Positions 9,240 through 62,815 of a DNA stretch of 64,000 nucleotides are shown one piece after another. The translations under genes were made by a program, and so were the position numbers. This DNA comes from Laetmonice hystrix (lineage: Eukaryota). The notes below the pieces were generated by a model. The model worked only from the letters and a program-made list of their open reading frames with translations, ran no database searches and was not told the origin of the DNA. Positions within the stretch are counted from its first letter, which is position 1; the number at the start of each line of letters is the position of its first letter. The DNA lies in the NCBI GenBank assembly GCA_965235115.1, contig OZ249439.1, positions 28,768,001 to 28,832,000 of the forward strand. Direction: 5' to 3'.

Positions 9240-10778
9240 CGGGGTCGCTTGTGAGGGGCTGTCCCGGGAGGTGCATTTATTTCCCAAAAATAGCTGCCAT
9301 TAGCAGTGGGATCAAGTCTGAAATTGAAGAGGGGTGGGGTGGGATGTTCGCGTGGCTGGCGGAGGGGGGCGGGGGAGGGGGGGGGGGGGGGTCCGTGAGC
9401 TGCTCCTGGACGCTGTCGGCGCACTGCATGTGGATATCATTGGCTTGGCGATCCGGTAAAGCTCGACATTGGAAGGCTGGTCGGATATGGTGGTAGTTTG
9501 ACGTCGTTCGCGTCCACAACCACTACCACCACCAACCACCACCGCCACCACCACCCGCCCGGCCTGCCTGCCTCCTCCTTCCCTCCCTGCCTGCCTCCTA
9601 CCGGCCGGCCGGGTCGCGTCGCCAGCACAGGATGCCCGCCCGCCACTCAGCCTGCTCCGTAATTATACCGAGAGATTTATCGCGCGCTCCTTAGCCGACC
9701 CTTCGACAACACTGGGCAGACCGCTCGAGCCTGCCGATGGACGGGTCGGTGTAAGAGGGTCCATTCACACCTCAATCCATGCCGTCAGACTCTCAGTGTA
9801 TAAGACTGTCATTGTCGACGCTAACATGAGTGGATTGTATTGAGATGGACTATTACCGTCTGCTGAGTGCAAATTACGTATTAATACGATAATCTGTGTT
9901 GTTCTGCAGTACCATAAGAAGGTTGTGCGTCAAAAAGGGTTGTGAATCTTTGTGAAGGTTTTCTTTTAAACCAGCCACACCCTGTTCACATAAAAGGCAC
10001 TCTTATAGCTGATGTGCTGATTTAAAGGCGAGGGGTATACCTTGTAAAATCGACAATTGCTTTTCCCACGGAAATCTGCGTTGATATCATCGGATACAAG
10101 GATACGGTTGTTCCAGTCCGTTACAATACGGACCTGTAAAAAACACCTAAGATACACAAACAATACACACAGTGAGGGATACATAGTTGTACGGATACAG
10201 TTCCCAGCTAGTGGTCAATGTACGTTTGAGATATTTGCCAACTCGAGAGGCATGTGAGCACATTACCTATTCATTGACAGGCGTTGGGAAGACAGGCAGA
10301 GCGCGAGAGAGACAGAGAGAGAAAGAGAGAGAGGTAGGTAGAGAGGAGCATGCTGTCGGTCTGGGCCCACGTTCCACAAGTCAGCCGTCGCCCCGCCCGC
10401 TCGCCGCGACACTGCAGCCTCTGAAGCGAGCAGTCGCCAGCACCATCCTCGCCATAGCCTCACCGGGTACGGGAGCAGCCACCACCACCACCACCCTGCC
10501 CCCTCAACGTCATCGGCTCCTCCCCGCCCGCGCATGCGCACTCCAGTTTCGCGACCAGCCCGTGGACGGACGGCCAAGGGACCGTTGACGGAGGGGAGGT
10601 GGATCGAGGCGAGCGAGAGGGCGTAGTGGCGACCGTAGGCCGAAAATGCGCTCGAGTTTGTTGCCCCTTGTTTGGTCCCAGTTCGGAATCCACACCCGAC
10701 TAAAATGTGAACTGCCGGACGGGGCGCGCTGACCGAGAGGCAGAGGGGGACCGTGTCGGGGCTCGGAAAGGCGGCAAC
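9240..10778 (+). promoter_or_regulatory. CpG/GC-rich promoter and 5' UTR region of the GluA gene, with a GA-rich tract near 10303-10348
   Basis: Dense CG/GC blocks at about 9330-9750 and 10270-10780 directly upstream of the start codon. TSS not determinable from sequence. Confidence 0.5.
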
Positions 10779-10869
10779 ATGAAGTACGTGAGGCTAATTC
10801 TCGTCCTCACCATCATACACTCTCTTCTCCTGGCCATGGTGCAAGCCTTCCCGAAACGCATCCCGATCG
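10779..10869 (+). CDS. GRIA: AMPA-type glutamate receptor (GluA) coding exon 1: signal peptide, MKYVRLILVLTIIHSLLLAMVQAFPKRIPI(G)
   Basis: ATG in context GCAACATG, then a basic residue, a hydrophobic core and VQA-F, a plausible signal peptidase site. Ends at a GTAAGT donor (10870), phase 1. IPIG matches the IQIG(G)LF motif at the start of the AMPAR ATD. Symbol is family-level only. Confidence 0.9.
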
Positions 10870-12886
10870 GTAAGTACCTGAAGCAAGCTCCACTTTCCTT
10901 ATACTTCTAAGAGGGATTTCTTTTTTTCTTTTTACCACATGGGCCGTTTTCCTTTCCAGAAATCTACATTCTTGCTCATCGATACCTTGGCTTGAAACAG
11001 TTTATCAGGATCAAGAGAGAGGTTTAATTATGCCTCATTGCTTTAAAATTTAATCAATTACGAAACCGAACGCGTAATTTCACCAGTGATCCCTTTGCAT
11101 TTCGTCTTAATCCGATGAGCTACGACTCGGGCTACGACAAACCAGGGCCGGTCGATTGCCGACCACTGGCTGGTGCGAGTTTTGTTTGCTATCTTTGATC
11201 AGTCTTGTTTGCTGTGGCCCGGACTGTAATGCTAGAGCCAGAATGCTAAAGGTGGTGTGTAAGCAACACCTGCATAATTCATAAGATGTCCTCCGGTATG
11301 GGCGGTCCAGTCAGGGAGTGCTCTCTCATGTTGATGGCCTTTTCCCTGACGCTGCACACGTGCGGTGACGACGGCCACCGCCGCGCCATGCCATGCCATG
11401 CCCGGCCCGCAAGCCAGGCCCGTTTGAGGTTGCTCGCAATTCGCCGCCGCCAACTTGCTTTACCGGTGCAGAAAACTGGATTCGGAGGAGAAATTGCCTC
11501 GGCGGAGCGAGCGCTCGCCAGCCCACTACCGCCCTCTATGTGTTACGTCTTCAGCGGCGCCGCCAATGGCAGGACGCTCTACTTGACCATATGGAGAGTT
11601 TTTAGTTTCAAGGACGGGATCTTTTATTTTGGTTATTTATTTTGTGTTTATTGGCCACCTTGGGTGTGCGCGTTTGTGTGTCTGTGTGGGTGGGTGGGGG
11701 GGGGGGGGCTGAAGGCGGGGTGTGAAACCTATTACAACGATAGACTCATAGCCTACTGACGTGTTTTACCGTGACCTCACGCGGTCAGCCGTCTGCAGGT
11801 CCCCCAGAAACAAGACTGGTCTAGAATATGGTAATGGAACAACGAACACGCAGACATTATATCCTCCAATCACCCCCTCCATTCCCCCACCTCTGCGTCC
11901 TCACTATGGAAACCCAACCAGCCCGGGTCAAGGAAATACTGTAATGAAGACGCACCATTGGATATAAGCCAATCAAAAGCGGGCAGACGGGGACATTAAA
12001 AGAGGAAGCCACGCCCATTTCCAGATACAGCATGTTGAAGTATGACCTGCCAAGTTCCGTTACCATAGTACCTGTAGCCGCACTTCAAGTTGATGAAGAT
12101 CCCAGCGACGGTTCCCACAGTATCGCCATAAAAGTATGGCACTGGGTCATCTATAGCATTAGCACTCATGTACATTCTACTGGAGATGGTTGTTAATGTT
12201 ACACTATAGCCAGGCGATCAAAAAAATGGGAGGGAATAATTCTCTGCAGTATGCTCTCAGTGTGATAAAATTATTGCTAATGATGAGTGTACTGCTTAAT
12301 AGGAATACAAGTGGATTCTGATACATCAAATAAGCAGTACGATGTCGGTGCATGGTTTGGTGATGCCCTTGATAGTACTGTATTAGATTTTTATTAGTTT
12401 GTTTAAGTAGCCTGAAAGGTAAAAGATATACATTAGGGGCCACCGGTTATAAAAGTCAACGCCCTGCAACTAAATTATTCAGACTTGTTGTCTGACTGCT
12501 AGTCTAATTCGCAATCTAATCGTATTTTATGAAAGGGTATTCAACAGATTTCTGCACAAATTATAGCTTTGTTGAATATACATATTGAAAATAGAGGTAT
12601 TTTCTAAAGGTCGAAGGAAAGACTTTGGCTGAAATGGCCAGCTGGTCGACCTCAATATAGGATGTCAGGAACATGATGAAAGCGATAATATCGAAAAAGT
12701 GCCTGATACCCGCATGTATATTTCTGACCCATAAACACCAAATGGCACCTGGACTGTAATGGGATGTGATAGATGTACTCTAGCCAGAGACTACCAACAA
12801 TATGATACATTCGCTGACACAGTCCATATTTAAAAATTTCACGAATATACTCAAAACAGTATTATCTCTAAATATTATCTCGCTAC

Positions 12887-13307
12887 CTTTTCGTTGATGA
12901 CTTATATTCTGTATGTTTACTGACTGCCGTGTGTTTCTCTACTATAGGTGCGTTATTCGACAATGAATCGTCACTTTCGTTGATGACTTATATTCTGTAT
13001 GTTTACTGACTGCCGTGTGTTTCTCTACTATAGGTGCGTTATTCGACAATGAATCGTCACTTTCGTTGATGACTTATATTCTGTATGTTTACTGACTGTT
13101 TCTCTACGACAGGTGCGTTATTCGACAATGAATCGTCACTTTGGTTGATGACTTATATTCTGTATGTTTACTGACTGTTTCTCTACGACAGGTGCGTTAT
13201 TCGACAATGAATCGTCACTTTGGTTGATGACTTATATTCTGTATGTTTACTGACTGCCGCGTTTTCCTCTACTTCAGGTGCGTTATTCGACAATGAATCG
13301 TCACTTT
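12887..13307 (+). repeat. Five tandem copies (79-86 bp) of the intron 1 3' splice site plus the first 30 nt of exon 2
   Basis: AG|GTGCGTTATTCGACAATGAATCGTCACTTT occurs with exon-side starts at 12948, 13034, 13113, 13192 and 13278. Confidence 0.97.
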
Positions 13308-13430
13308 ACACACGGACCGCCTTCCGGTACGAGATAGAGAAACACAACAATGGGACCCAATCCGGCTTCAAACTGGATAAATATGAAAAGATCATAGATA
13401 TCGCCGACAGTTACGCGCTCGGAAGAGCAA
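13278..13430 (+). CDS. GRIA: GluA coding exon 2 (ATD): (G)ALFDNESSLYTRTAFRYEIEKHNNG...IADSYALGRA(I)
   Basis: CTTCAG acceptor at 13276-77, GTAAGT donor at 13431, 153 nt, phase 1-1. AFRY and DSY motifs are typical of the AMPAR ATD. Confidence 0.92.
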
Positions 13431-13960
13431 GTAAGTAAATGCCTTCTCTTTGTTTTCGTACCTCGATCCTAGAAATGACCAGGATTTGTTTTTTCTAATT
13501 ATGATGAATAATTGCCCTTTCTGACTACCAACTTTATGGTCTTTATACTCCTGAAGGCCACAAGGAAAGAGGTAAAATACGCCCATCAGAATTAAGTTCT
13601 TTGGAATCAATATTGGTCTCATATTTTACAGGCGCCCAGACTCAATATTCATTTCAGGAAATTGTTAATGAACACTTAAAAAGATTCAAAGCATTTGTCA
13701 TGACAAAGACACTTGGCAAGAGCGAACGTAGCATTTTATAGACGTTTTACCAGTCTCATTGACGGAAAAGAAAGTGCTTGAAATTTGGATGTTATTTGAA
13801 AGCTTCTCCAATTCGACCTTTTTGACTGTGAAGAAAGGCAGCTTGGTGTTCGCATCCATCTGTTAGTGCAAGTAAAAAAAGAACCTTTAAATTGATTGCA
13901 TATCAGGCGCTTATTTATTTTATTTTGAGAAAACATCTGGAATAACGTAAAGTCAGATGG

Positions 13961-14774
13961 ATTAAAGTGTCCTATTGGTGGTTCATCACTACCTGGTTTG
14001 TAAACATTAAAGTGTCCTATTGGTGGCTCACTACCTGGTCTGTAAACATTGAAGTGTCCTATTAGTGGCTCACTACCTGGTCTGTAAACATTAAAGTGTC
14101 CTATTAGTGGCTCACTACCTGGTCTGTAAACATTACAGTGTCCTATTGGTGGCTCACTACCTGGTCTGTAAACATTACAGTGTCCTATTGGTGGCTCACT
14201 ACCCGGTCTGTAAACATTGAAGTGTCCTATTGGTGGCTCACTACCTGGTCTGTAAACATTGAAGTGTCCTATTGGTGGCTCACTACCTGGTCTGTAAACA
14301 TTGAAGTGTCCTATTGGTGGCTCACTACCTGGTCTGTAAACATTGAAGTGTCCTATTGGTGGCTCACTACCTGGTCTGTAAACATTGAAGTGTCCTATTG
14401 GTGGCTCACCACCTGGTCTGTAAACATTGAAGTGTCCTATTGGTGGCTCACTACTTGGTCTGTAAACATTGAAGTGTCCTATTGGTGGCTCACTACCTGG
14501 TCTGTGGTCTGTAAACATTACAGTGTCCTATTGGTGGCTCACTACCCGGTCTGTAAACATTACAGTGTCCTATTGGTGGCTCACTACTTGGTCTGTAAAC
14601 ATTACAGTGTCCTATTGGTGGCTCACTACTTGGTCTGTAAACATTACAGTGTCCTATTGGTGGCTCACTACCTGGTCTGTAAACATTACAGTGTCCTATT
14701 GGTGGCTCACTACCCGGTCTGTAAACATTGAAGTGTCCTATCGGTGGCTCACTACCTGCTCTGTAAACATTAAA
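13961..14774 (+). repeat. 42-bp minisatellite (CTGTAAACATTGAAGTGTCCTATTGGTGGCTCACTACCTGGT), about 19 copies
   Basis: Tandem copies; source of the 14-aa periodic ORFs in the track. Confidence 0.97.
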
Positions 14775-15596
14775 ATTACGTGCGGTTTTAACATATACTT
14801 CGTCAGCACGCTCGTACATCTTTTTATCGTTCATTGTAACCGATTCTATTCTTCTACAACACAGAAGTTCGGTGGTGCCTCTGGTGCTGAGTGATTTACA
14901 GTCGTCATGAAACACTCAGATAAAGATCTAATAAAGTCGGTGAAATTAGCAGCTAACATGATATATTATGACAGATCATTTAGCAATCAATTAAAGAGCC
15001 CATGCCATTATAACCACAATGTATTCACACAATAGCACATGATGTCATACATAAACTATAACATCAGATTTATAACCAACAAAACGGCAGACTGCACATA
15101 TTTACAATCTTTTCACCAGAACGCATTTCTGGGTTATCCCTTTTCAATTTGCCGGTTGAAAGCTATTCAGGACATGATTGCACCATACACAGGTTGAATA
15201 ACACGTGTACAATTCACCTTGCCGTCAATTCGATAATGATACCATACTTCAACAACACGCCGTTTTTCTGCAGGTCTATGTTTGGCCAGACAATAACTAT
15301 CCTGTTGTAACATACTCTAACGTCAGCATTTTCATGTGACACGCACGACTTTTTAAGTTCAATGTGTAACAGATATTTCACTTGAATTCATATATTTTGT
15401 ATAGCGCTGAAGTTCTGTTTGCAACGCGCAAAATGGAAAAGCTTTCGAGCTCTCTTGGATGGTTGCCAGGCTCTGACTCAGAGATCGCAACTCAACTATA
15501 TTCTAAAATGAATGGTCGGAGTTATTTTGTCAACCATTTCATTGAATCGAGTAATTGTCACCGATTTTCGATAATTCACTCTCATGCTAATCCCAA

Positions 15597-18744: not shown

Positions 18745-19799
18745 GGACAGTGGCCACCGGTAGGCGGGACCCAGGGAGGGCCGGCTGATTCCTCCATCAT
18801 TGTGGTGGGGCAGACAGTGGCCACCGGTAGGCGGGACCCACGGAGGGCCGGCTGATTCCTCCATCATTGTGGTGGGGCAGACAGTGGCCACCGGTAGGCG
18901 GGACCCAGGGAGGGCCGGCTGATTCCTCCATCATTGTGGTGGGGCAGACAGTGGCCACCGGTAGGCGGGACCCACGGAGGGCCGACTGATTCCTCCATCA
19001 TTGTGGTGGGGCAGACAGTGGCCACCGGTAGGCGGGACCCACGGAGGGCCGGCTGATTCCTCCATCATTGTGGTGGGGCAGACAGTGGCCACCGGTAGGC
19101 GGGACCCACGGAGGGCCGGCTGATTCCTCCATCATTGTGGTGGGGCAGACAGTGGCCACCGGTAGGCGGGACCCAGGGAGGGCCGGCTGATTCCTCCATC
19201 ATTGTGGTGGGGCAGACAGTGGCCACCGGTAGGCGGGACCCACGGAGGGCCGGCTGATTCCTTCATCATTGTGGTGGGGCAGACAGTGGCCACCGGTAGG
19301 CGGGACCCACGGAGGGCCGGCTGATTCCTCCATCATTGTGGTGGGGCAGACAGTGGCCACCGGTAGGCGGGACCCAGGGAGGGCCGGCTGATTCCTCCAT
19401 CATTGTGGTGGGGCAGACAGTGGCCACCGGTAGGCGGGACCCAGGGAGGGCCGGCTGATTCCTCCATCATTGTGGTGGGGCAGACAGTGGCCACCGGTAG
19501 GCGGGACCCAGGGAGGGCCGGCTGATTCCTCCATCATTGTGGTGGGGCAGACAGTGGCCACCGGTAGGCGGGACCCGCGGAGGGCCGGCTGATTCCTCCA
19601 TCATTGTGGTGGGGCAGACAGTGGCCACCGGTAGGCGGGACCCACGGAGGGCCGGCTGATTCCTCCATCATTGTGGTGGGGCAGACAGTGGCCACCGGTA
19701 GGCGGGACCCACGGAGGGCCGGCTGATTCCTCCATCATTGTGGTGGGGCAGACAGTGGCCACCGGTATAGGCGGGACCCACGGAGGGCCGGCTGATTCC
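18745..19799 (+). repeat. 67-bp GC-rich minisatellite, about 16 copies
   Basis: Unit GACAGTGGCCACCGGTAGGCGGGACCCACGGAGGGCCGGCTGATTCCTCCATCATTGTGGTGGGGCA; period confirmed at 18813/18880. Confidence 0.97.
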
Positions 19800-20772: not shown

Positions 20773-22850
20773 ATAATACCGGAATAATGGTAAAGCCATT
20801 AGTGTAATACTGGAATAATGGTAAAGCCATTAGTAGGATACTGGAATAATGGTAAAGCCATTAGTAGAATACCGGAATAATGGTAAAGCCATTAGTAGAA
20901 TACTGGAATAATGGTAAAGCCATTAGTAGGATACTGGAATAATAGTAAAGCTATTAGTAGAATACTGGAATAATGGTAAAGCCATTAGTAGAATACCAAA
21001 ATAATGGTAATGCCATGAGTGTAATGCTGAAATAATGGTAATGCCATTAGTAGAATACTGGAATAATGGTAAAGCCATTAGTAGAATACCGGAATAATGG
21101 TAAAGCCATTAGTAGAATACTGGAATAATGGTAATGCCATTAGTATAATACTGGAATAATGGTAAAGCCATTAGTATAATACTGGAATAATGGTAAAGCC
21201 ATTAGTAGAATACTGGAATAATGGTAAAGCCATTAGTAGAATACTGGAATAATGGTAAAGCCATTGGTAGAATACTGGAATAATAGTAAAGCCATTAGTA
21301 TAATACTGGAATAATGGTAAAGCCATTAGTAGGATACTGGAATAATGGTAAAGCTATTAGTAGAATACTGGAATAATGGTAAAGCCATTAGTAGAATACT
21401 GGAATAATGGTAAAGCCATTAGTAGGATACTGGAATAATGGTAAAGCCATTAGTAGAATACTGGAATAATGGTAAAGCCATTAGTAGAATACTGGAATAA
21501 TGGTAAAGCTATTAGTAGAATACTGAAATAATGGTAAAGCTATTAGTAGAATACTGGAATAATGGTAAAGCCATTAGTAGAATACCGGAATAATGGTAAA
21601 GCCATTAGTAAAATACCGGAATAATGGTAATGCCATTAGTAAAATACCGGAATAATGGTAATGCCATTAGTAGAATACCGCAATAATGGTAAAGCCATTA
21701 GTAGAATACCGGAATAATGGTAAAGCCATTAGTAAAATACTGGAATAATGGTAAAGCCATTAGTATAATACTGGAATAATGGTAAAGCCATTAGTAAAAT
21801 ACTGGAATAATGGTAAAGCCATTAGTATAATACTGGAATAATGGTAAAGCCATTAGTAGAATACTGGAATAATGGTAAAGCCATTGGTAGAATACTGGAA
21901 TAATAGTAAAGCCATTAGTATAATACTGGAATAATGGTAAAGCCATTAGTAGGATACTGGAATAATGGTAAAGCTATTAGTAGAATACTGGAATAATGGT
22001 AAAGCCATTAGTAGAATACTGGAATAATGGTAAAGCCATTAGTAGGATACTGGAATAATGGTAAAGCCATTAGTAGAATACTGGAATAATGGTAAAGCCA
22101 TTAGTAGAATACTGGAATAATGGTAAAGCTATTAGTAGAATACTGAAATAATGGTAATGCCATTAGTAGAATACTGGAATAATGGTAAAGCTATTAGTAG
22201 AATACTGAAATAATGGTAATGCCATTAGTAGAATATTGGAATAATGGTAAAGCTATTAGTAGAATACTGGAATAATGGTAAAGCCATTAGTAGAATACTG
22301 GAATAATGGTAAAGCCATTGGTAGAATACCGGAATAATGGTAATGCCATTAGTAAAATACCGGAATAATGGTAATGCCATTAGTAGAATACCGCAATAAT
22401 GGTAAAGCCATTAGTAGAATACTGGAATAATGGTAAAGCCATTAGTAAAATACCGGAATAATGGTAATGCCATTAGTAAAATACCGGAATAATGGTAATG
22501 CCATTAGTAGAATACCGCAATAATGGTAATGCCATTAGTAGAATACTGGAATAATGGTAAAGCCATTAGTAGAATACCGGAATAATGGTAAAGCCATTAG
22601 TAGAATACTGGAATAATGGTAATGCCATTAGTATAATACTGGAATAATGGTAAAGCCATTAGTAAAATACCGGAATAATGGTAATGCCATTAGTAGAATA
22701 CCGGAATAATGGTAAAGCCATTAGTAGAATACCGGAATAATGGTAAAGCCATTAGTAAAATACTGGAATAATGGTAAAGCCATTAGTAAAATACTGGAAT
22801 AATGGTAAAGCTATTAGTAGAATACTGAAATGATAGTAAAGATATTAGTA
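20773..22850 (+). repeat. 31-bp AT-rich satellite (GGAATAATGGTAAAGCCATTAGTAGAATACT), about 67 copies
   Basis: Period confirmed at 20821/20852. Confidence 0.98.
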
Positions 22851-23137
22851 GGGAATAATGATTATATTGGCGACCATGAACTTTGTCGGACACATGTAAT
22901 AAACTCACACCGACTTGTGAAATAATAGAAGGTTCATCCAGTTATTTCGACCCAGTCACTCGTTATGCTGGCCCTAGGATTTACTATGTTAGAAGACCGT
23001 GTTGGATGGCATACCGACACACAATGACATGTAAGCTGATATAATAAAATCTCAACTGTGTATCTGGGCCTTATGGTGAAATCCATTAAATTATACTTTT
23101 ATAATGAGGAAAATATTAGGCAAAGAGTGTAGCAGTG

Positions 23138-25637: not shown

Positions 25638-26382
25638 CTGCCATGAGGACAGCCCTTTTAGTATACTACTTAATCCCACTGTACAACGGTCCTGCCATGA
25701 GGACAGCCCTTTTAGTATACTACTTAATCCCAGTGTACAGCGGTCCTGCCATGAGGACAGCCCTTTTAGTATACTACTTAATCCCAGTGTACAGCGGTCC
25801 TGCCATGAGGACACCCCTTTTAGTATACTACTTAATCCTGGTGTACAGCGGTCCTGCCATGAGGACCCCCCTTTTAGTATACTACTTAATCCCGGTGTAC
25901 AGCGGTCCTGCCATGAGGACCCCCCTTTTAGTATACTACTTAATCCCGGTGTACAGCGGTCCTGCCATGAGGACCCCCCTTTTAGTATACTACTTAATCC
26001 CGGTGTACAGCGGTCCTGCCATGAGGACCCCCCTTTTAGTATACTACTTAATCCCGGTGTACAGCGGTCCTGCCATGAGGACCCCCCTTTTAGTATACTA
26101 CTTAATCCCGGTGTACAGCGGTCCTGCCATGAGGACCCCCCTTTTAGTATACTACTTAATCCCGGTGTACAGCGGTCCTGCCATGAGGACCCCCCTTTTA
26201 GTATACTACTTAATCCCGGTGTACAGCGGTCCTGCCATGAGGACCCCCCTTTTAGTATACTACTTAATCCCGGTGTACAGCGGTCCTGCCATGAGGACCC
26301 CCCTTTTAGTATACTACTTAATCCCGGTGTACAGCGGTCCTGCCACCCCGTTTAGTATACTACCGGTGTACAGTTGTCCTGC
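25638..26382 (+). repeat. 54-bp minisatellite, about 13-14 copies
   Basis: 18-aa periodicity in two reading frames (MRTPLLVYYLIPVYSGPA). Confidence 0.97.
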
Positions 26383-27204: not shown

Positions 27205-27375
27205 TTAAGTACAGGAACAATCACGTCCAACAGCACTATTACTGTGCAACAACAGCAGAATCTACCAATGTTCATTAGTTCAAATATCCAATTATTTGTA
27301 TAATTTTGGTACATTTGCAGTGCGCATGATAAGGTATCCACGTGACTGACAGACTATTTCGATTCTCTGTTGCAG

Positions 27376-27621
27376 TTTGCTCAACTATGGCCAAAGGAAT
27401 ATTTGCGTTGTTTGGAGTAACAAATGCGACATCTTTGAGTACAGTGCAGTCTCATTGCAACACCTTCCATATGCCTTACGTCACACCCAGTGCGCCAGTC
27501 AACCATTCTGACAACCCGGGATTTCTTTTGCGCATGCGTCCATCGTATGATGGCGCAATGATTGACATTATAAAACATTATAGATGGACTCGAATATTTT
27601 ATATTTACGACACACAAGAAG
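27376..27621 (+). CDS. GRIA: GluA coding exon 3 (ATD): (I)CSTMAKGIFALFG...VQSHCNTFHMPYVTP...MRPSYDGAMIDIIKHYRWTRIFYIYDTQE(G)
   Basis: TTGCAG acceptor, GTAGGT donor, 246 nt, phase 1-1. Closely resembles GluA2 FCSQFSRGVYAIFG / SFCGTLHVSFITP / MRP...Y.W.KF.YLYD..RG. Confidence 0.95.
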
Positions 27622-28245
27622 GTAGGTGTCCTTTTCCTCCACCTTGAATTTTACTTCAGTTTTCGCATGTTTGCTGGTGTCCTTCTGATGTGTACAAGTG
27701 TGTTATTATTGTCAGGTTCCAAATGCCATGAAGATCATGAAGATTAAGTCTTCTTGAATTGACTTTTAGAAGTGTGAAAACGAAAAGTCTGCAAGTCTTT
27801 TATAGTTACTGGATCAAAAGTGCATGTGGGAACGAAAAGAGGAAGCCACTAGAGAAACTCTTAACAAAAACGTATTCACCCATTTTGTCTATGGGGCGAA
27901 ATCAACATATTAAAACTCTACCTTTCAGAACATGCCATACCCGAAACATTAGCACCTTTCTACAGTGGAATGCATCTCTGCGGAACGTATTTGATTTAAT
28001 CTACAAGAGAGCAGATAATATACTTTCTGAGTAAGACACTAAATAGACGATGTTGTTTGTCAAAATGGGGCGGTATACTGTCGCCCCTTTCAACAAATAG
28101 CCCTACTCTACAATACCGCCTACAGGTCTTCCAACTGGCGATTCGTTAGAAGTGTCGTCTTCAAAAGAAGTATCTGTTCCCGATTGGTTTCGATTGCCTG
28201 CCGTAATGAGGGTAATCGGAAGACGGTATGAGATTACCATCCTTA

Positions 28246-36844: not shown

Positions 36845-39719
36845 AGGACGATACGTTACTTTGACTACTCGGAGACGATACGTTACTTTGACTACTCGGA
36901 GACGATACGTTACTTTGACTACTCGGAGACTTTGACTACTCGGAGACGATACGTTACTATGACTACTCGGAGACGATACGTTACTTTGACTACTCGGAGA
37001 CTTTGACTACTCGGAGACGATACGTTACTTTGACTACTCGGAGACTTTGACTACTCGGAGACTTTGACTACTCGGAGACGATACGTTACTTTGACTACTC
37101 GGAGACGATACGTTACTTTGACTACTCGGAGACGATACGTTACTTTGACCACTCGGAGACGATACGTTACTTTGACTACTCGGAGACGATACGTTACTTT
37201 GACTACTCGGAGACGATACGTTAGTTTGACTACTCGGAGACGATACGTTACTTTGACTACTCGGAGACGATACGTTACTTTGACTACTCGGAGACTTTGA
37301 CTACTCGGAGACGATACGTTACTTTGACTACTCGGAGACTTTGACTACTCGGAGACGATACGTTACTTTGACTACTCGGAGACGATACGTTACTTTGACT
37401 ACTCGGAGACTTTGACTACTCGGAGACGATACGTTACTTTGACTACTCGGAGACGATACGTTACTTTGACTACTCGGAGACGATACGTTACTTTGACTAC
37501 TCGGAGACGATACGTCACTTTGACTACTCGGAGACGATACGTTACTTTGACTACTCGGAGACTTTGACTACTCGGAGACGATACGTTACTTTGACTACTC
37601 GGAAACTTTGACTACTCGGAGACGATACGTTACTTTGACTACTCGGAGACGATACGTTACTTTGACTACTCGGAGACGATACGTTACTTTGACTACTCGG
37701 AGACGATACGTTACTTTGACTACTCGGAGACGATACGTTACTTTGACTACTCGGAGACGATACGTTACTTTGATTACTCAAAGACGATACGTTACTTTGA
37801 CTGCTCGGAGACGATACGTTACTTTGACTACTCGGAGACGATACGTTACTTTGACTACTCGGAGACGATACGTTACTTTGACTACTCGGAGACTTTGACT
37901 ACTCGGAGACGATACGTTACTTTGACTACTCGGAAACTTTGACTACTCGGAGACGATACGTTACTTTGACTGCTCGGAGACGATACGTTACTTTGACTAC
38001 TCGGAGACGATACGTTACTTTGACTACTCGGAGACGATACGTTACTTTGACTACTCGGAGACTTTGACTACTCGGAGACGATACGTTACTTTGACTACTC
38101 GGAAACTTTGACTACTCGGAGACGATACGTTACTTTGACTACTCGGAGACGGATACGTTACTTTGACTACTCGGAGACGATACGTTACTTTGACTACTCG
38201 GAGACGATACGTTACTGTGACTACTCGGAGACGATACGTTACTTTGACTACGCGGAGACGATACGTTACTTTGACTACTCGGAGACGATACGTTACTTTG
38301 ACTACTCGGAGACGATACGTTACTTTGACTACTCGGAGACGATACGTTACTTTGACTACTCGGAGACGATACGTTACTTTGACTACTCGTAGACGATACG
38401 TTACTTTGACTACTCGGAGACGATACGTTACTTTGACTACTCGGAGACTTTGACTACTCGGAGACGATACGTTACTTTGACTACTCGGAGACTTTGACTA
38501 CTCGGAGACGATACGTTACTTTGACTACTCGGAGACTTTGACTACTCGGAGACGATACGTTACTTTGACTACTCGGAGACGATACGTTACTTTGACTACT
38601 CGGAGACGATACGTTACTTTGACTACTCGGAGACGATACGTCACTTTGACTACTCGGAGACGATACGTTACTTTGACTACTCGGAGACTTTGACTACTCG
38701 GAGACGATACGTTACTTTGACTACTCGGAAACTTTGACTACTCGGAGACGATACGTTACTTTGACTACTCGGAGACGATACGTTACTTTGACTACTCGGA
38801 GACGATACGTTACTTTGACTACTCGGAGACGATACGTTACTTTGACTACTCGGAGACGATACGTTACTTTGACTACTCGGAGACGATACGTTACTTTGAC
38901 TACTCGGAGACGATACGTTACTTTGACTACTCAAAGACGATACGTTACTTTGACTGCTCGGAGACGATACGTTACTTTGACTACGCGGAGACGATACGTT
39001 ACTTTGACTACTCGGAGACGATACGTTACTTTGACTACTCGGAGACGATACGTTACTTTGACTACTCGGAGACGATACGTTACTTTGACTACTCGGAGAC
39101 GATACGTTACTTTGACTACTCGTAGACGATACGTTACTTTGACTACTCGGAGACGATACGTTACTTTGACTACTCGGAGACTTTGACTACTCGGAGACGA
39201 TACGTTACTTTGACTGCTCGGAGACGATACGTTACTTTGACCACTCGGAGACGATACGTTACTTTGACTACTCGGAGACGATACGTTACTTTGACTACTC
39301 GGAGACGATACGTTACTTTGACTACTCGGAGACGATACGTTACTTTGACTACTCGGAGACTTTTACTACTCGGAGACGATAAGTTACTTTGACTACTCGG
39401 AGACGATACGTTACTTTGACTACTCGGAGACGATACGTTACTTTGACTACTGGGAGACGATACGTTACTTTGACTACTCGGAGATACGTTACTTTGACTA
39501 CTCGTAGACGATACGTTACTTTGACTACTCGGAGACGATACGTTACTTTGACTACTCGGAGACGATACGTTCTTTGACTACTCGGAGACGATACGTTACT
39601 TTGACTACTTGGAGACGATACGTTACTTTAACTACTCGGAGACGATACGTTACTTTGACTACTCGGAGACGATCCGTTACTTTGACTACTCGGAGACGAT
39701 ACGTTACTTTGACTACGCG
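36845..39719 (+). repeat. 27-bp satellite (GACTACTCGGAGACGATACGTTACTTT) interspersed with 17-bp deletion units
   Basis: 9-aa periodic ORFs (TTRRRYVTL); short unit GACTACTCGGAGACTTT. Confidence 0.98.
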
Positions 39720-41197
39720 GATATCATTAAATGTGCACGTTTAAAATCACAGGAAAAATGCGGCAATCTGTCTGCATCGTGGCATTAAATGGTACACATG
39801 GATAAATGCCGCGGAAATTTAAAAAAATGTATTAATAAATACATGGTTATAATAATACTGACAACAATGAGAGTTAAATATATACTTGTTATACGGCACC
39901 TTATATACATGAAATGGTTCTTGACCTTATGGGTATCTCTGCATACCCAGTAAGAAGTGAGTTTTTTTCATCCCATTGGCCTCGTCTTCGATTTTTCACA
40001 GCTGTGGTTGACAGGGCTCCTAACGGCAAAGACGAAGGGCCATTAAGCAATTGTTTACAAGTGGCACTGGGCAGGACAATCAGACTCGACCGAGGCCGCG
40101 CTGGTAATGGGGGAAGGGAGACTGCACAGATGCATTATCGTGTATCTTTTAGATGTATTGGTCGGTCTCTCAGCCAGTAGGCTATTCACTAAGTGGGTTT
40201 GCGGGCCTCTATAGCTATAGTAGCTACTATAGCGCGCATCGTGGTCAAGGTTCAAACCGACATGATGCCGGAAAGGCTTCTCCATCACTGCTACTTGGGA
40301 GGTCAGACGGATGTAGGGTTGAGGCCAGGAGGGTCTGACTTTAATACCCTCACCAGGGATGTACGCCTCCTGACCTGAATGGTGTCACTGGGACTGCTAC
40401 CATTACCTACCTCCACCTAGAGCCATTTAATCCATTGCCTTTGCTGAGCGTCGCCCTGCATCTGGAAATACCTCATTGATAAGCCAGCAATCGTCTTGAC
40501 GGCTGATGCGGGAGACAGGCGCACTCGGGGTAAATTTCGTCCTGTTCCACCAGCTAATGTCGCTGGCATGTATATTTAATTTGCTAAAAGCCTTGCCAGT
40601 TCCATTAGCTAATACAATTAACGTCATTTTCTTTGCCTGCATTACCACGCCCATGTCAAAACGTATCTTGACTGATATTTCTCATTTTTCGTCGGGGCTT
40701 GGAGCATTTTGCTGACGAGAGTCCCGTGCTGACCAAGAGAGTCCATGCACCTTGTCATCTGTACTGTACAGGGTAACAGTTAGGTCGACGGTCTCCCGGG
40801 CAGAAACTGTTTAATCTACGAGCTTGGTGCCCTGTTGGGAAGTAGACTTCACCAATATAACCAACTTCATTTATAGACCCGGGCAACTGTTCTAATCAGG
40901 CGGCTTGGAAAACCTGCCTTCAGCTCATGATGACCTGAGACTATGGCAGGGGTGACGATACGGGATCAGCCTTCTTATATAGAAGTCGGTCCCAGAGGCT
41001 GGGGGGAAAAGGATTACCATGGAGACAGGGGATAGCTTTGGCCATGAACGATCCATCCGGGAGGAACACTTGACATTCACCCACCAACCAGGGCAAGCTC
41101 CCCCCCCCCCCGCCTCCTCCCGCCTCGCTCCAGGCGCGGTAATTAGCGGTTCAATAATGCTTGTCTCCAAGTGGTTGGAAACAAACTTGCAACAAAT

Positions 41198-61145: not shown

Positions 61146-61330
61146 TGTTCAGTTAATGAATGAAGCTAATGAAGCTCGTATAAAAATACTTTACGAGCTG
61201 GATAAATTAGCTCAAATTAAACTTGTTTGACTATAGGCTTTAACTGTTAAAGAAAATGCCAGCAATGTTAGGATTGCCCCGACTTCTGAATCGAAGTAAA
61301 GTCGCTGAAGTCCCTGCTCCCATTTCCCAG

Positions 61331-61438
61331 GTGCAGTTCCAAGGTGTGACGGGGCATGTTGCCTTTGATGAGTTCGGAATGCGACAAGACTACACCCTAG
61401 ACGTGCTAGAGCTAAGTCTCGACAGCGAACCGAAGAAG
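61331..61438 (+). CDS. GRIA: GluA coding exon 8: VQFQGVTGHVAFDEFGMRQDYTLDVLELSLDSEPKK
   Basis: TCCCAG acceptor, GTGAGA donor, 108 nt. G(L/V)TG.I.FD..G.R..YT motif. Confidence 0.95.
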
Positions 61439-61702
61439 GTGAGAATATTCTGATGTCTACTACGGCTCGATATTTGAAAATCTGAATAATTGGAATTATT
61501 CAAAATGAGACACAACTTGTTATAACATCTCATTCTGGTCCGATTGGAAGTGATGCGGTCTCTACGCATTAATGGACCAAATATATGTAAAAGTCAAATT
61601 TCATATGGTTCAAAATGGGATATGGTCGTAAATACACCGTTATTTATAGTATTCTTACTACTGCTTCATGGGAATTGTAAAAATAATCCGGTACATTTAC
61701 AG

Positions 61703-61810: not shown

Positions 61811-62541
61811 GTGAGTGCCCCCCCCCCCGCCCCCCCCCCCCGGCCTCTGCCCCTGACGGCGATTCACAATTCTCCCAGCGCTAGTTCCGTCGTGTATCTA
61901 TAACCAATAGATAACGGCGGATATCGCCGTGAGAGTCCCGGATGTCATCGACGCTGGAGTGATGCGCTGCCCCGGCTGCCCGGTAATCAGGCCGTAGATA
62001 CCTGTAATTGGAATGGAAATGACTAGCGACGGCCAGGACTGACCAAGGGTCGTCGTCTACGTGAAGGATCTCGCATGAAAGATTGCTCCTTCACATTGCA
62101 TGGGGAAGATGGTGGTTGGGGGGTCTTAGAGGGGGCGACAGGACCGTTTACAGACCGGCCTCTTCTGTGTCATCCAGTTTATAATGGGGGAAATTATTCC
62201 GGCAAGAATAGGGGTAAACGTAATCACTGTTAATTATTGGGTGGAGTATCTGGGGTTGATTCAGCACAAATCATACGCGATGTTCGAAAACCAACAGAAA
62301 CTCTACGAAAGAAGGTGCATGCATGCATTTAATCCCTTGGCATCTATCGAAAATAGTGGGGGGTCGCCCCGGTGCGCGGGTTTTCTCCTATCATCTCATC
62401 ATTATCACCCAATGGATTTCACCAACTGAGTTATAGTTACCTTGTTTGCAGGGTGTTTGTATATAAAGAAAGTGCATGCCAGATGTGCCTGTTGTGCGGC
62501 AGTATAGACCATTCTTTAGACCAAAGCTGTTCCTCTTCCAG

Positions 62542-62754
62542 TCGGCGCCTTATCTGATGCTGCGGAAGCAACCCGATGAAGGAGGTCCCCTTGTAGGGAA
62601 CGACAGATTTGAGGGCTACTGTGCCGACGTGGCGGAGAAATTGGCGAAGATTGTAGGCTTCGACTACATATTACGTCTGGTAAAGGACAATAAGTATGGC
62701 GAGAAGATGCCTGACGGTACCTGGAACGGTATGGTAGGAGAACTTACAAGGCGG
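62542..62754 (+). CDS. GRIA: GluA coding exon 10 (S1): SAPYLMLRK...GNDRFEGYCADVAEKLAKIVGFDY.LRLVKDNKYG...WNGMVGELTRR; gene continues beyond the window
   Basis: TTCCAG acceptor, GTAAGT donor, 213 nt. GN.RFEGYC, KYG and WNGMVGEL are hallmark S1 motifs. The next exon (ADLA..PLT...R) was not found before 64000. Confidence 0.97.
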
Positions 62755-62815
62755 GTAAGTTGGCTAGCCTAGAATCCTGCATGGCTTTCTTTATCTCACG
62801 TTTGTCGGCCATCGC

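What the first reader, a model, noticed from the sequence alone, without database searches (positions are those of the whole stretch)
12887..13307. Five-fold tandem splice acceptor at GluA exon 2: a chain of four self-contained mini-introns, each with a stop codon
Seen: the last ~50 nt of intron 1 plus the first 30 nt of exon 2 are repeated five times. AG|GTGCGT starts at 12948, 13034, 13113, 13192 and 13278, and the array has CTTT microhomology at both edges. Each of the four units between acceptors (86, 79, 79, 86 nt) begins GTGCGT, contains a near-consensus branch point TACTGAC and ends in a pyrimidine tract plus AG, so each is a complete short intron. Stable use of any of acceptors 1-4 reads GALFDNESSL(S/W)LMTYILYVY then TGA, and that TGA lies inside the branch-point motif (e.g. 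13007-13009), giving a 50-aa product. Only acceptor 5 gives the receptor. The 30 exonic nt are identical in all copies, while the differences cluster in the 3' splice site: TATAG in copies 1-2, GACAG with a 7-nt deletion moving the branch A from -25 to -18 in copies 3-4, and the best site CTTCAG in copy 5. Established: tandem duplication of an AG|GT site is a proposed route to intron gain, and AG|GT ratchet points support recursive splicing. Inference: splicing exon 1 to an upstream copy regenerates the donor TCG|GTGCGT, so the error could be removed by re-splicing. The array could be a recursive rescue ladder, an NMD-coupled dosage control for the receptor, or a length-polymorphic allele.
Basis: partly seen in the sequence, partly recalled or inferred. 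Interest (0 to 1): 0.85.

Follow-up and report, generated by a model that had tools for sequence, protein, structure and literature searches.

The report
Five-copy splice acceptor duplication, iGluR gene
A young tandem duplication has placed five near-identical copies of the intron 1/exon 2 splice acceptor in a glutamate-receptor gene of this animal only; it is probably a tolerated minisatellite rather than an evolved control device, but it is a neat natural test case for splice-site choice and re-splicing.

Summary
At 12889-13307 the last 49-56 nt of intron 1 plus the first 30 nt of exon 2 occur five times. AG|GTGCGT starts at 12948, 13034, 13113, 13192 and 13278. Each unit has a TACTGAC branch motif and a pyrimidine tract. 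Acceptors 1-4 read into TGA, giving a 50-aa product.

The array appears once in a 627-Mb chromosome-scale assembly. Short-read contigs show its core at about 3-6 times flank depth, so it is real DNA. Re-phased, it is a head, two identical 86-nt units, two identical 79-nt units and a tail, which points to recent turnover.

Seventeen orthologous exon-2 loci from other organisms (49-93% aa identity) each have one acceptor at the same phase-1 position and no array. The array is therefore derived, not a conserved device.

No RNA run exists, so splicing could not be tested. The regenerated donor TCG|GTGCGT pairs with this genome's own U1 more weakly (-5.0 kcal/mol) than the downstream unit donors (-6.5 to -8.3). 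This argues against an efficient recursive rescue ladder.

My best reading is a tolerated, probably polymorphic, minisatellite-type duplication carrying dual-specific AG|GT sites. Only the last and strongest acceptor yields the conserved receptor reading. "GluA" is unproven; the gene is an AMPA/kainate-type iGluR.

The parts
10779..10869 (+). Exon 1 coding part. It encodes the signal peptide MKYVRLILVLTIIHSLLLAMVQAFPKRIPI plus the first base of a Gly codon (phase 1). The donor is G|GTAAGT at 10870.
   Evidence: Read directly and translated. The assignment rests on sequence features only; exon 1 could not be found in relatives.
10870..13277 (+). Intron 1 as defined by use of the fifth acceptor (2,408 nt). 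Its last about 390 nt are the array.
12889..13307 (+). Tandem array of 5.0 copies with period 86/79. It appears only once in the 627-Mb genome.
   Evidence: TRF, alignment A1, own-genome search
12927..13098 (+). Two identical 86-nt 'A' units in the re-phased frame (12927-13012 and 13013-13098). Their acceptor context is CTACTATAG|GTGCGT.
   Evidence: u1==u2 True
13099..13256 (+). Two identical 79-nt 'B' units (13099-13177 and 13178-13256). They have a 7-nt deletion, the acceptor context CTACGACAG|GTGCGT, and G instead of C at the junction.
   Evidence: (u3==u4 True)
13257..13307 (+). 'C' tail. It holds the best pyrimidine tract (17 of 21 Y) and CTTCAG|GTGCGT. This is the acceptor whose reading matches the orthologues.
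12946..12953 (+). AG|GTGCGT site 1, a decoy acceptor and dual-specific site.
13032..13039 (+). AG|GTGCGT site 2
13111..13118 (+). AG|GTGCGT site 3
13190..13197 (+). AG|GTGCGT site 4
13276..13283 (+). AG|GTGCGT site 5, the productive acceptor of exon 2.
13004..13010 (+). TACTGAC branch-point motif of unit 2. The other copies lie at 12918-12924, 13090-13096, 13169-13175 and 13248-13254. It contains the in-frame TGA at 13007-13009.
13278..13430 (+). Exon 2 (153 nt, phase 1 at both ends), which begins the amino-terminal domain. The donor is A|GTAAGT at 13431.
   Evidence: It is 93% identical to P0001 and conserved in 17 loci.
27342..27644 (+). A downstream exon of the same gene (approximate bounds) encoding an ANF_receptor segment.
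   Evidence: Pfam PF01094, E 1.1e-14
62476..62769 (+). A downstream exon (approximate bounds) encoding ligand-binding segment S1.
   Evidence: Pfam PF10613, E 1.9e-19. Best PDB hits are GluK3/GluK1 at 2.6e-17 and GluA1 at 9.4e-17.

Best explanation
This is a young, lineage-specific, minisatellite-type tandem duplication. It happens to span the intron 1/exon 2 acceptor of an AMPA/kainate-type ionotropic glutamate receptor gene.

Shown:
- The array is real DNA and appears once in the genome.
- It is derived relative to a conserved single acceptor.
- It is built from recently re-duplicated units: two A units, two B units and a C tail.
- Only the fifth acceptor gives the conserved protein.

Inferred:
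- The array is tolerated because everything upstream of the last copy can simply be removed as part of intron 1.
- The last copy has the best acceptor, with CAG and the richest pyrimidine tract. Copies 1-4 carry weaker ones: TAG in copies 1-2, and a purine at -5 plus a shortened tract in copies 3-4.
- Exon 2 begins with GT (Gly codon G|GT followed by Ala), so every copy is a dual-specific AG|GT site. Any use of an upstream acceptor, or any splice within the array, can in principle be corrected by a further splice. This lowers the cost of the duplication.
- Some leakage into transcripts with a premature stop is expected.
- Nothing indicates that the array was selected as a regulatory device, and it is probably polymorphic in the population.
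For: Array confirmed.

Real DNA:
- One copy in a 627-Mb, 35-contig assembly.
- In three short-read contig sets, the array-core contig has depth 270/122/305 against flanks of about 50/31-44/49, which is about 3-6-fold.

Young:
- u1==u2 and u3==u4 exactly, with exact repeats of 124 and 113 nt.
- By contrast, third-codon identity to the nearest available relative is only 46%.

Derived:
- 17 orthologous exon-2 loci each have one acceptor at the same phase-1 position and no second copy of the first 24 exonic nt.
- TRF finds no array across the acceptor in L004, L005, L007 or L008.

Mutational background:
- 16.8% of this window is tandem arrays.

Productive acceptor:
- The acceptor-5 reading is 93% identical to P0001.
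- Acceptor 5 has 17/21 pyrimidines and CAG. The others have 15/21 with TAG, or 10/14 with a purine at -5.

Polymorphism:
- Read contigs carry a unit variant (13103 T>C, 13108 G>T) that is absent from the assembly.

Precedent:
- Repeat expansions carrying dual-specific AG|GT sites are argued to be less harmful because they can be spliced out (PMC10809524).
Against: - No RNA data exist, so which acceptors are used, and how often, is unknown.
- The differences between unit types are concentrated in the 3' splice-site region: 6 of 7 substitution sites fall within 16 columns (scan-statistic P about 0.003). Simple neutral decay of unused copies does not predict this. It hints at selection on acceptor strength, which would mean the upstream copies matter to fitness.
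- The window species alone has G at +5 and T at +6 of the exon-initial GTGCGT. This could be a coincidence or an adaptation that helps re-splicing.
- The nearest relative available is distant, so 'young' rests on unit identity rather than on a sister species.
Confidence: 0.6

Rival explanations
1. Working recursive ladder. Upstream acceptors are used often. The regenerated donor TCG|GTGCGT, or splices within the array between AG|GT sites, then removes the remaining units stepwise, so the mature mRNA is normal whichever acceptor is hit first.
For: - All cis elements are present in every unit: GTGCGT, TACTGAC 61 nt downstream, a pyrimidine tract, and an AG with no intervening AG.
- Unit donors in a CAG|GTGCGT context pair with this genome's own U1 5' end (ATACTTACCTG) at -7.9 to -8.3 kcal/mol. 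This is as good as the real exon 2 donor at -7.3.
- Dual-specific sites in tandem repeats are spliced in human UBC and VCX3A (PMC10809524).
- Only this species has +5G/+6T at the exon start.
Against: - The regenerated donor is the weakest at -5.0 kcal/mol. Recursive sites normally need a ratchet-point donor stronger than the next downstream donor, otherwise the cryptic exon is included (PMC8605326). Here that would insert a 79-86-nt unit containing a stop codon.
- The sites are not in a long intron and are not conserved.
- There is no RNA evidence.
Confidence: 0.2
2. Hypomorphic or mildly deleterious allele. A sizeable share of transcripts use acceptors 1-4 or include a unit as an exon. These acquire a premature stop and are lost, lowering receptor output. 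The array persists only because it is recent.
For: - There are four decoy acceptors with identical branch motifs and only modestly weaker tracts.
- Downstream unit donors out-compete the regenerated donor (PMC8605326).
- The array is young and variable in unit composition.
- Substitutions that can be tentatively polarised weaken upstream acceptors or strengthen the last one. This is what selection against decoy use would produce.
Against: - The reference haplotype carries it in an otherwise intact, conserved gene.
- No expression data exist.
- The polarisation rests on one read contig.
Confidence: 0.13
3. Evolved NMD-coupled dosage control. Regulated choice among the five acceptors tunes productive against non-productive mRNA.
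For: Stable use of any upstream acceptor gives an early stop. Poison-exon regulation is a known principle (PMC8605326, introduction).
Against: - Regulatory poison exons and ratchet points are typically strongly conserved. This array is absent from all 17 orthologous loci.
- It contains 100% identical, recently duplicated units.
- No distinct regulatory motifs or RNA structure were found (z = +2.24; no Rfam hit).
Confidence: 0.04
4. Assembly artefact. The true genome has one acceptor.
For: Tandem arrays can be mis-sized. The reference 'B' unit (CTACGACAG) is not represented by a laid read contig, whereas a variant is.
Against: - The assembly is chromosome-scale.
- Three distinct unit types argue against a stutter artefact.
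- Array-core k-mer depth is about 3-6 times flank depth in all three read sets.
Confidence: 0.03

Closest known systems
Dual-specific splice sites (AG|GT) in tandem repeats: human UBC and VCX3A (Duan et al. 2024, PMC10809524)
   Same: A tandem array in which every unit carries one AG|GT that can serve as acceptor or donor. A candidate intron therefore equals one or more repeat units, and expansion is buffered because extra units can be spliced out. Copy number turns over rapidly.
   Different: In UBC the units are coding and in frame, so splicing varies the number of protein monomers. Here the units are 79-86 nt, out of frame and contain a stop. The AG|GT is a pre-existing annotated acceptor at an intron/exon boundary, so correct processing leaves no trace in the mRNA. 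Splicing was not shown here.
Intron creation by tandem duplication of an AGGT proto-splice site (Rogers model; Hellsten et al. 2011, PMC3265369; Lehmann et al. 2010, PMC2891723)
   Same: A single-step duplication delivers donor, branch point, tract and acceptor together. The unit size is the size of the would-be intron, and NMD can buffer unspliced forms.
   Different: Those cases duplicate exon-internal sequence and create a new intron position. Here the duplication spans an existing acceptor, so no new intron position arises. Intron 1 simply becomes longer, or the units act as nested mini-introns separated by zero-length exons.
Recursive splicing at ratchet points (Drosophila Ubx, kuz, Bx; Joseph et al. 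2021, PMC8605326; Duff et al., bioRxiv 10.1101/006163)
   Same: An acceptor and a donor are juxtaposed, and splicing to the site regenerates a 5' splice site at the exon 1 end.
   Different: Ratchet points lie in very long introns and are highly conserved. Their regenerated donor usually beats the downstream cryptic-exon donor. Here the intron is 2.4 kb, the sites are species-specific, and the regenerated donor is the weakest.
Ordinary intronic minisatellites of this genome
   Same: Period, copy number and identity are similar to the many arrays in the window, for example 42 nt x 19 at 13961-14774 in the next intron.
   Different: This array includes 30 nt of coding exon and a functional splice site.

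Membership tests
Recursive splice site / ratchet point | Juxtaposed 3' splice site and 5' splice site motif, (Y)n-AG|GTRAGT | tested here: met
   AG|GTGCGT is preceded by a branch motif and a pyrimidine tract at all five sites. Position +4 is C, which is off consensus.
Recursive splice site / ratchet point | Regenerated donor at least as strong as the next downstream donor (splice-donor competition) | tested here: not met
   U1 duplex is -5.0 kcal/mol for TCG|GTGCGT, against -6.5 to -8.3 for the downstream unit donors. This genome's own U1 5' end was verified. The rule is from PMC8605326.
Recursive splice site / ratchet point | Evolutionary conservation of the site | tested here: not met
   17 orthologous loci each have a single acceptor and no array.
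Recursive splice site / ratchet point | Location deep inside a long intron | tested here: not met
   Intron 1 is 2,408 nt, and the sites lie in its last 330 nt.
Recursive splice site / ratchet point | RNA intermediates, sawtooth profile or lariats | not testable with these tools
   No RNA run holds the locus.
Dual-specific splice sites in a tandem repeat / duplication-born intron | Every repeat unit carries one AG|GT, so the distance between sites equals the unit length | tested here: met
   Units are 86, 79, 79 and 86 nt between AG|GT sites.
Dual-specific splice sites in a tandem repeat / duplication-born intron | Unit contains a usable branch point and tract at workable distances | tested here: met
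   TACTGAC fits YNYURAY. The donor to branch A distance is 61 nt and the branch A to exon distance is 18-25 nt, with no AG in between.
Dual-specific splice sites in a tandem repeat / duplication-born intron | Duplication is derived relative to orthologues | tested here: met
Dual-specific splice sites in a tandem repeat / duplication-born intron | Units are actually excised in RNA | not testable with these tools
   No RNA run.
Regulated poison exon / AS-NMD switch | Conserved alternative region containing a stop codon | tested here: not met
   A stop is present, but the region is absent from all orthologous loci.
NAGNAG-type tandem acceptors | Acceptors 3 nt apart, giving in-frame single-residue variants | tested here: not met
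   The spacing is 79-86 nt, out of frame.
Ionotropic glutamate receptor, AMPA/kainate group | ANF_receptor amino-terminal domain plus Lig_chan-Glu_bd segment | tested here: met
   PF01094 at 1.1e-14 and 2.6e-06; PF10613 at 1.9e-19.
GluA (AMPA) subtype specifically | Closer to GluA than to GluK sequences | tested here: inconclusive
   For the S1 exon, GluK3/GluK1 score 2.6e-17 and GluA1 scores 9.4e-17, which is practically equal. The full-length protein was not assembled.

The most novel reading that the evidence does not exclude
The array is a natural, segregating chain of four zero-length recursive (dual-specific) splice sites in front of a neuronal receptor exon. Upstream acceptors are hit frequently, and the transcript is repaired by re-splicing or by splices within the array. 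The clustered substitutions in the 3' splice-site region and the species-specific +5G/+6T would then record ongoing selection tuning decoy against productive sites. That would make it a living intermediate showing how duplications that carry a splice site become harmless.
Probability: 0.2. Interest if true: 0.65.

Novelty: new member of a known kind. Interest (0 to 1): 0.4.

Why it matters
Tandem duplications that carry an AG|GT are the simplest proposed route to new introns. They are also one proposed reason why repeat expansions inside genes can be tolerated. Natural, recent examples are few, and they mostly involve exon-internal sites.

This case is a clean, young, five-unit example at an existing acceptor of a conserved neuronal gene. 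It has three unit types that differ almost only in acceptor strength. If RNA from this species becomes available, one RT-PCR would show three things:
- how a spliceosome chooses among near-identical acceptors 79-86 nt apart;
- whether a weak regenerated donor can rescue a wrong choice;
- how much output is lost to transcripts with a premature stop.

If only the last acceptor is used, this is simply an intronic minisatellite that took a splice site along, and is of modest interest.

Tried and rejected
- RNA evidence. Two run searches, one over intron 1 to exon 2 and one over a 3.2-kb stretch with five exons, returned only three contig sets from one sample and no RNA. Junction, lariat and NMD tests were therefore impossible.
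- Read laying. The runs are short-read contigs that break inside the array. They give depth and one unit variant, but no spanning piece and no copy number per haplotype.
- Dispersed repeat or transposon origin. Rejected, because the 419-nt array matches only itself in the genome.
- Paralogue comparison. There is no close paralogue of exon 2; the only other hit has E = 0.68.
- RNA structure masking upstream acceptors. Rejected, because the array folds worse than shuffled sequence (z = +2.24). There is no Rfam family in 10000-15000.
- Exon 1 in relatives. tblastn of the signal-peptide exon against all fetched loci gave only noise, so exon 1 rests on sequence features alone.
- Literature on duplicated acceptors in disease genes. 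Two phrase searches found nothing useful.
- MaxEnt-type splice scores could not be computed offline. U1 duplex energies and pyrimidine counts were used instead.
- In-frame TGA inside the branch motif as 'design'. Rejected as unremarkable. By my own arithmetic, a stop in about 18 intronic codons is expected more often than not.
- Earlier notes of this scan. None concern this locus.

Full report
**Observation.** The region 12889-13307 is a tandem array. TRF reports period 86/79, 5.0 copies, 93% matches and score 664.

Read directly and aligned (A1), each unit consists of 49-56 nt of intron end followed by the first 30 nt of exon 2. The string AG|GTGCGT begins at 12948, 13034, 13113, 13192 and 13278, giving unit lengths of 86, 79, 79 and 86 nt.

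Every unit has TACTGAC, a perfect YNYURAY branch motif. The branch A lies 25 nt (copies 1, 2 and 5) or 18 nt (copies 3 and 4) before the exon base. No AG intervenes, and the tract has 15/21, 10/14 or 17/21 pyrimidines.

Exon 1 runs from the ATG at 10779 to 10869 (phase 1) and has the donor G|GTAAGT. Joined to acceptors 1-4 it reads GALFDNESSL(S/W)LMTYILYVY and then TGA, a 50-aa product. Joined to acceptor 5 the frame stays open through exon 2, which spans 13278-13430.

The exception is the junction microhomology: the junction has three T's and the left flank four, so it is strictly TTT rather than CTTT.

**Gene.** Downstream open frames carry ANF_receptor (27342-27644 and 61256-61450) and Lig_chan-Glu_bd (62476-62769) matches. 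The S1 exon hits kainate receptors GluK3/GluK1 at 2.6e-17 and AMPA receptor GluA1 at 9.4e-17, which is almost equal. The gene is therefore an AMPA/kainate-type iGluR, and 'GluA' is not established.

**Is the array real DNA?** The window lies on contig 4 of a 627-Mb assembly in 35 contigs, and the 419-nt array matches nothing else in it.

Only three public runs hold the locus. All come from one sample, and all are kept as short-read contigs. Laid on 11800-14300 they break inside the array, as expected for k = 31.

The contig that carries the array core has mean word depth 270/122/305, against about 50/31-44/49 for single-copy flanks. That is roughly 3-6 copies per haplotype. Together with three distinct unit types, this makes an assembly artefact unlikely.

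The same contig differs from the reference at 13103 (T>C) and 13108 (G>T). It is therefore a deletion-type unit ending CTACTACAG, a type the assembly does not contain. The flanks show many allelic bubbles. The array is thus at least polymorphic in composition, although haplotype copy numbers could not be resolved.

**Anatomy and age.** When units are re-phased to start at the first variable column, the array resolves into five parts:
- a 38-nt head;
- two identical 86-nt A units;
- two identical 79-nt B units;
- a C tail.

Exact direct repeats reach 124 and 113 nt. The last duplications are therefore very recent.

The three unit types differ at seven substitution sites and one 7-nt indel. Six of the seven sites fall within 16 columns of the 3' splice-site region. 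A scan statistic gives P about 0.003. This test is post hoc and the events may not be independent.

The last copy has the best acceptor, CTTCAG with the richest tract. Copies 1-2 have TAG. Copies 3-4 have a purine at -5 and a shortened tract.

Using the extra read variant as a rough guide, I tentatively infer three derived changes:
- -3 C>T in the A units;
- -5 T>G in the B units;
- -4 A>T in the C tail.

All three go in the direction 'upstream weaker, last stronger'.

**Comparative evidence.** A search with the exon 2 open frame found six proteins (60-93% identity), and DNA was retrievable for four of them. A metagenome scan added 15 loci at 49-82% identity.

In all 17 loci that include the exon start, there is one acceptor at the same phase-1 position. 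No second copy of the first 24 exonic nt occurs anywhere in the locus. TRF finds no array across the acceptor in the four loci checked with it, L004, L005, L007 and L008.

The single acceptor is therefore ancestral and the array is specific to this lineage. The nearest relative (L004) is distant, with 79% exon identity and 46% identity at third positions. The youth of the array therefore rests on unit identity and not on a sister species.

The exon-initial GT comes from the Gly codon G|GT followed by Ala GCN, and is common among the orthologues. Only the window species has G at +5 and T at +6, giving GTGCGT.

**Can the units work as introns, and can a wrong choice be rescued?** At the sequence level, yes. 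The donor to branch distance is 61 nt and the branch to acceptor distance is 18-25 nt.

I checked that this genome's own U1 genes begin ATACTTACCTG, then computed duplex energies for each candidate donor:

| Donor | Energy (kcal/mol) |
|---|---|
| Exon 1 donor | -10.7 |
| Exon 2 donor | -7.3 |
| Unit donors in TAG\| context | -6.5 |
| Unit donors in CAG\| context | -7.9 to -8.3 |
| Regenerated TCG\|GTGCGT | -5.0 |

The regenerated donor is the weakest of all. In recursive splicing, the outcome depends on competition between the regenerated donor and the next downstream donor. If the regenerated donor is weaker, the cryptic exon is included (PMC8605326).

Here the next downstream donor is the following AG|GTGCGT. 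The predicted failure mode is therefore inclusion of a 79-86-nt unit carrying a stop, not clean rescue.

Splices within the array, from one AG|GT as donor to a later one as acceptor, would recreate an identical acceptor and harmlessly collapse the array. These use the better donors.

The array has no unusual RNA structure (z = +2.24) and no Rfam match.

**Most likely mechanism.** The window is 16.8% tandem arrays, including a 42-nt x 19 array 530 nt downstream in intron 2. Minisatellite formation is therefore a frequent mutation here.

I conclude, with confidence about 0.6, that one such event took the acceptor and 30 exonic nt along. I infer three reasons why it is tolerated:
- the last copy is intact and strongest;
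- everything upstream can leave with intron 1;
- each copy is a dual-specific AG|GT site, so further splices can correct errors.

Some loss to transcripts with a premature stop is expected.

A truly operating recursive ladder (0.2), a hypomorphic allele (0.13), an evolved NMD switch (0.04) and an artefact (0.03) remain as rivals. The clustering of differences in the acceptor region is the main observation that the neutral reading does not explain. It fits selection against decoy use.

**Relation to known systems.**
- The closest concept is the dual-specific splice site in tandem repeats. Such repeats are spliced in human UBC and VCX3A and are proposed to make expansions tolerable (PMC10809524).
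- It also resembles intron birth by tandem duplication of an AGGT (PMC3265369, PMC2891723). The difference is that here the duplicated AG|GT is an existing acceptor, so no new intron position results.
- It shares the juxtaposed acceptor-donor motif with ratchet points. It fails their other tested features: a long intron, conservation, and a dominant regenerated donor.

I therefore file it as a new member of a known kind.

An earlier, unchecked note of this scan on giant cuticle-type collagens, and the metagenome sources of the orthologues, hint at an annelid-like animal. I did not verify the taxon.

**Limits.** There are no RNA data, no spanning long reads, no sister species, and no calibrated splice-site scores. 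The exon 1 assignment rests on sequence features alone.

Noticed in passing
window:13961-14774: A 42-nt minisatellite with 19 copies at 94% identity lies in intron 2, only about 530 nt downstream of the exon 2 donor. Read-contig depth rises to 400-900 there, against about 50 in the flanks.
   Followed up: partly
window:1-64000: The window is very rich in minisatellites: about 10.7 kb, or 16.8%, sits in arrays with period of 10 nt or more. Examples are 31 nt x 67 (20775-22851), 27/54/81 nt x 106 (36847-39721), 67 nt x 16 (18746-19799) and 54 nt x 13 (25638-26345). Most lie in the long introns of the iGluR gene.
   Followed up: partly
L004:1-231: The closest available relative (93% aa in exon 2) has its own unrelated 106-nt tandem repeat in intron 1. 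It ends about 290 nt upstream of its single acceptor. The 3' end of intron 1 therefore seems repeat-prone in this group.
   Followed up: no
window:13103-13108: Read contigs from all three runs show a unit variant (T>C at 13103, G>T at 13108, giving ...TTCCCTACTACAG|GT) that is not in the assembly. No laid contig shows the reference CTACGACAG form. The two haplotypes, or the individuals sampled, probably differ in array composition.
   Followed up: partly
window:12480-12597 and 13635: Local heterozygosity is high. Paired 118-nt contigs differ at 6 sites, and all three read sets carry a 16-nt insertion (CCAGACAGAGAATTAT) after 13635 at full depth relative to the assembly.
   Followed up: no
L011-L023 (JGI metagenome contigs Ga0209781, Ga0066190, Ga0056116 and others): Orthologous iGluR exon 2 sequences (49-57% aa) turn up in many environmental or host-associated metagenome contigs. 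This is evidently animal host DNA, and all carry the same phase-1 intron position.
   Followed up: partly
G000:C5:25913076-25986406; G000:C1:42.76 Mb and 70.7-71.2 Mb; G000:C19:20.356-20.366 Mb: U1 snRNA genes occur in several tandem clusters with spacing of about 2-3.5 kb. At least 42 copies score above the Rfam cut-off, and the two copies I read (L024, L025) begin with the canonical 5' end ATACTTACCTG.
   Followed up: no
window:62844-62870: A G27 homopolymer lies just after the S1-encoding exon.
   Followed up: no
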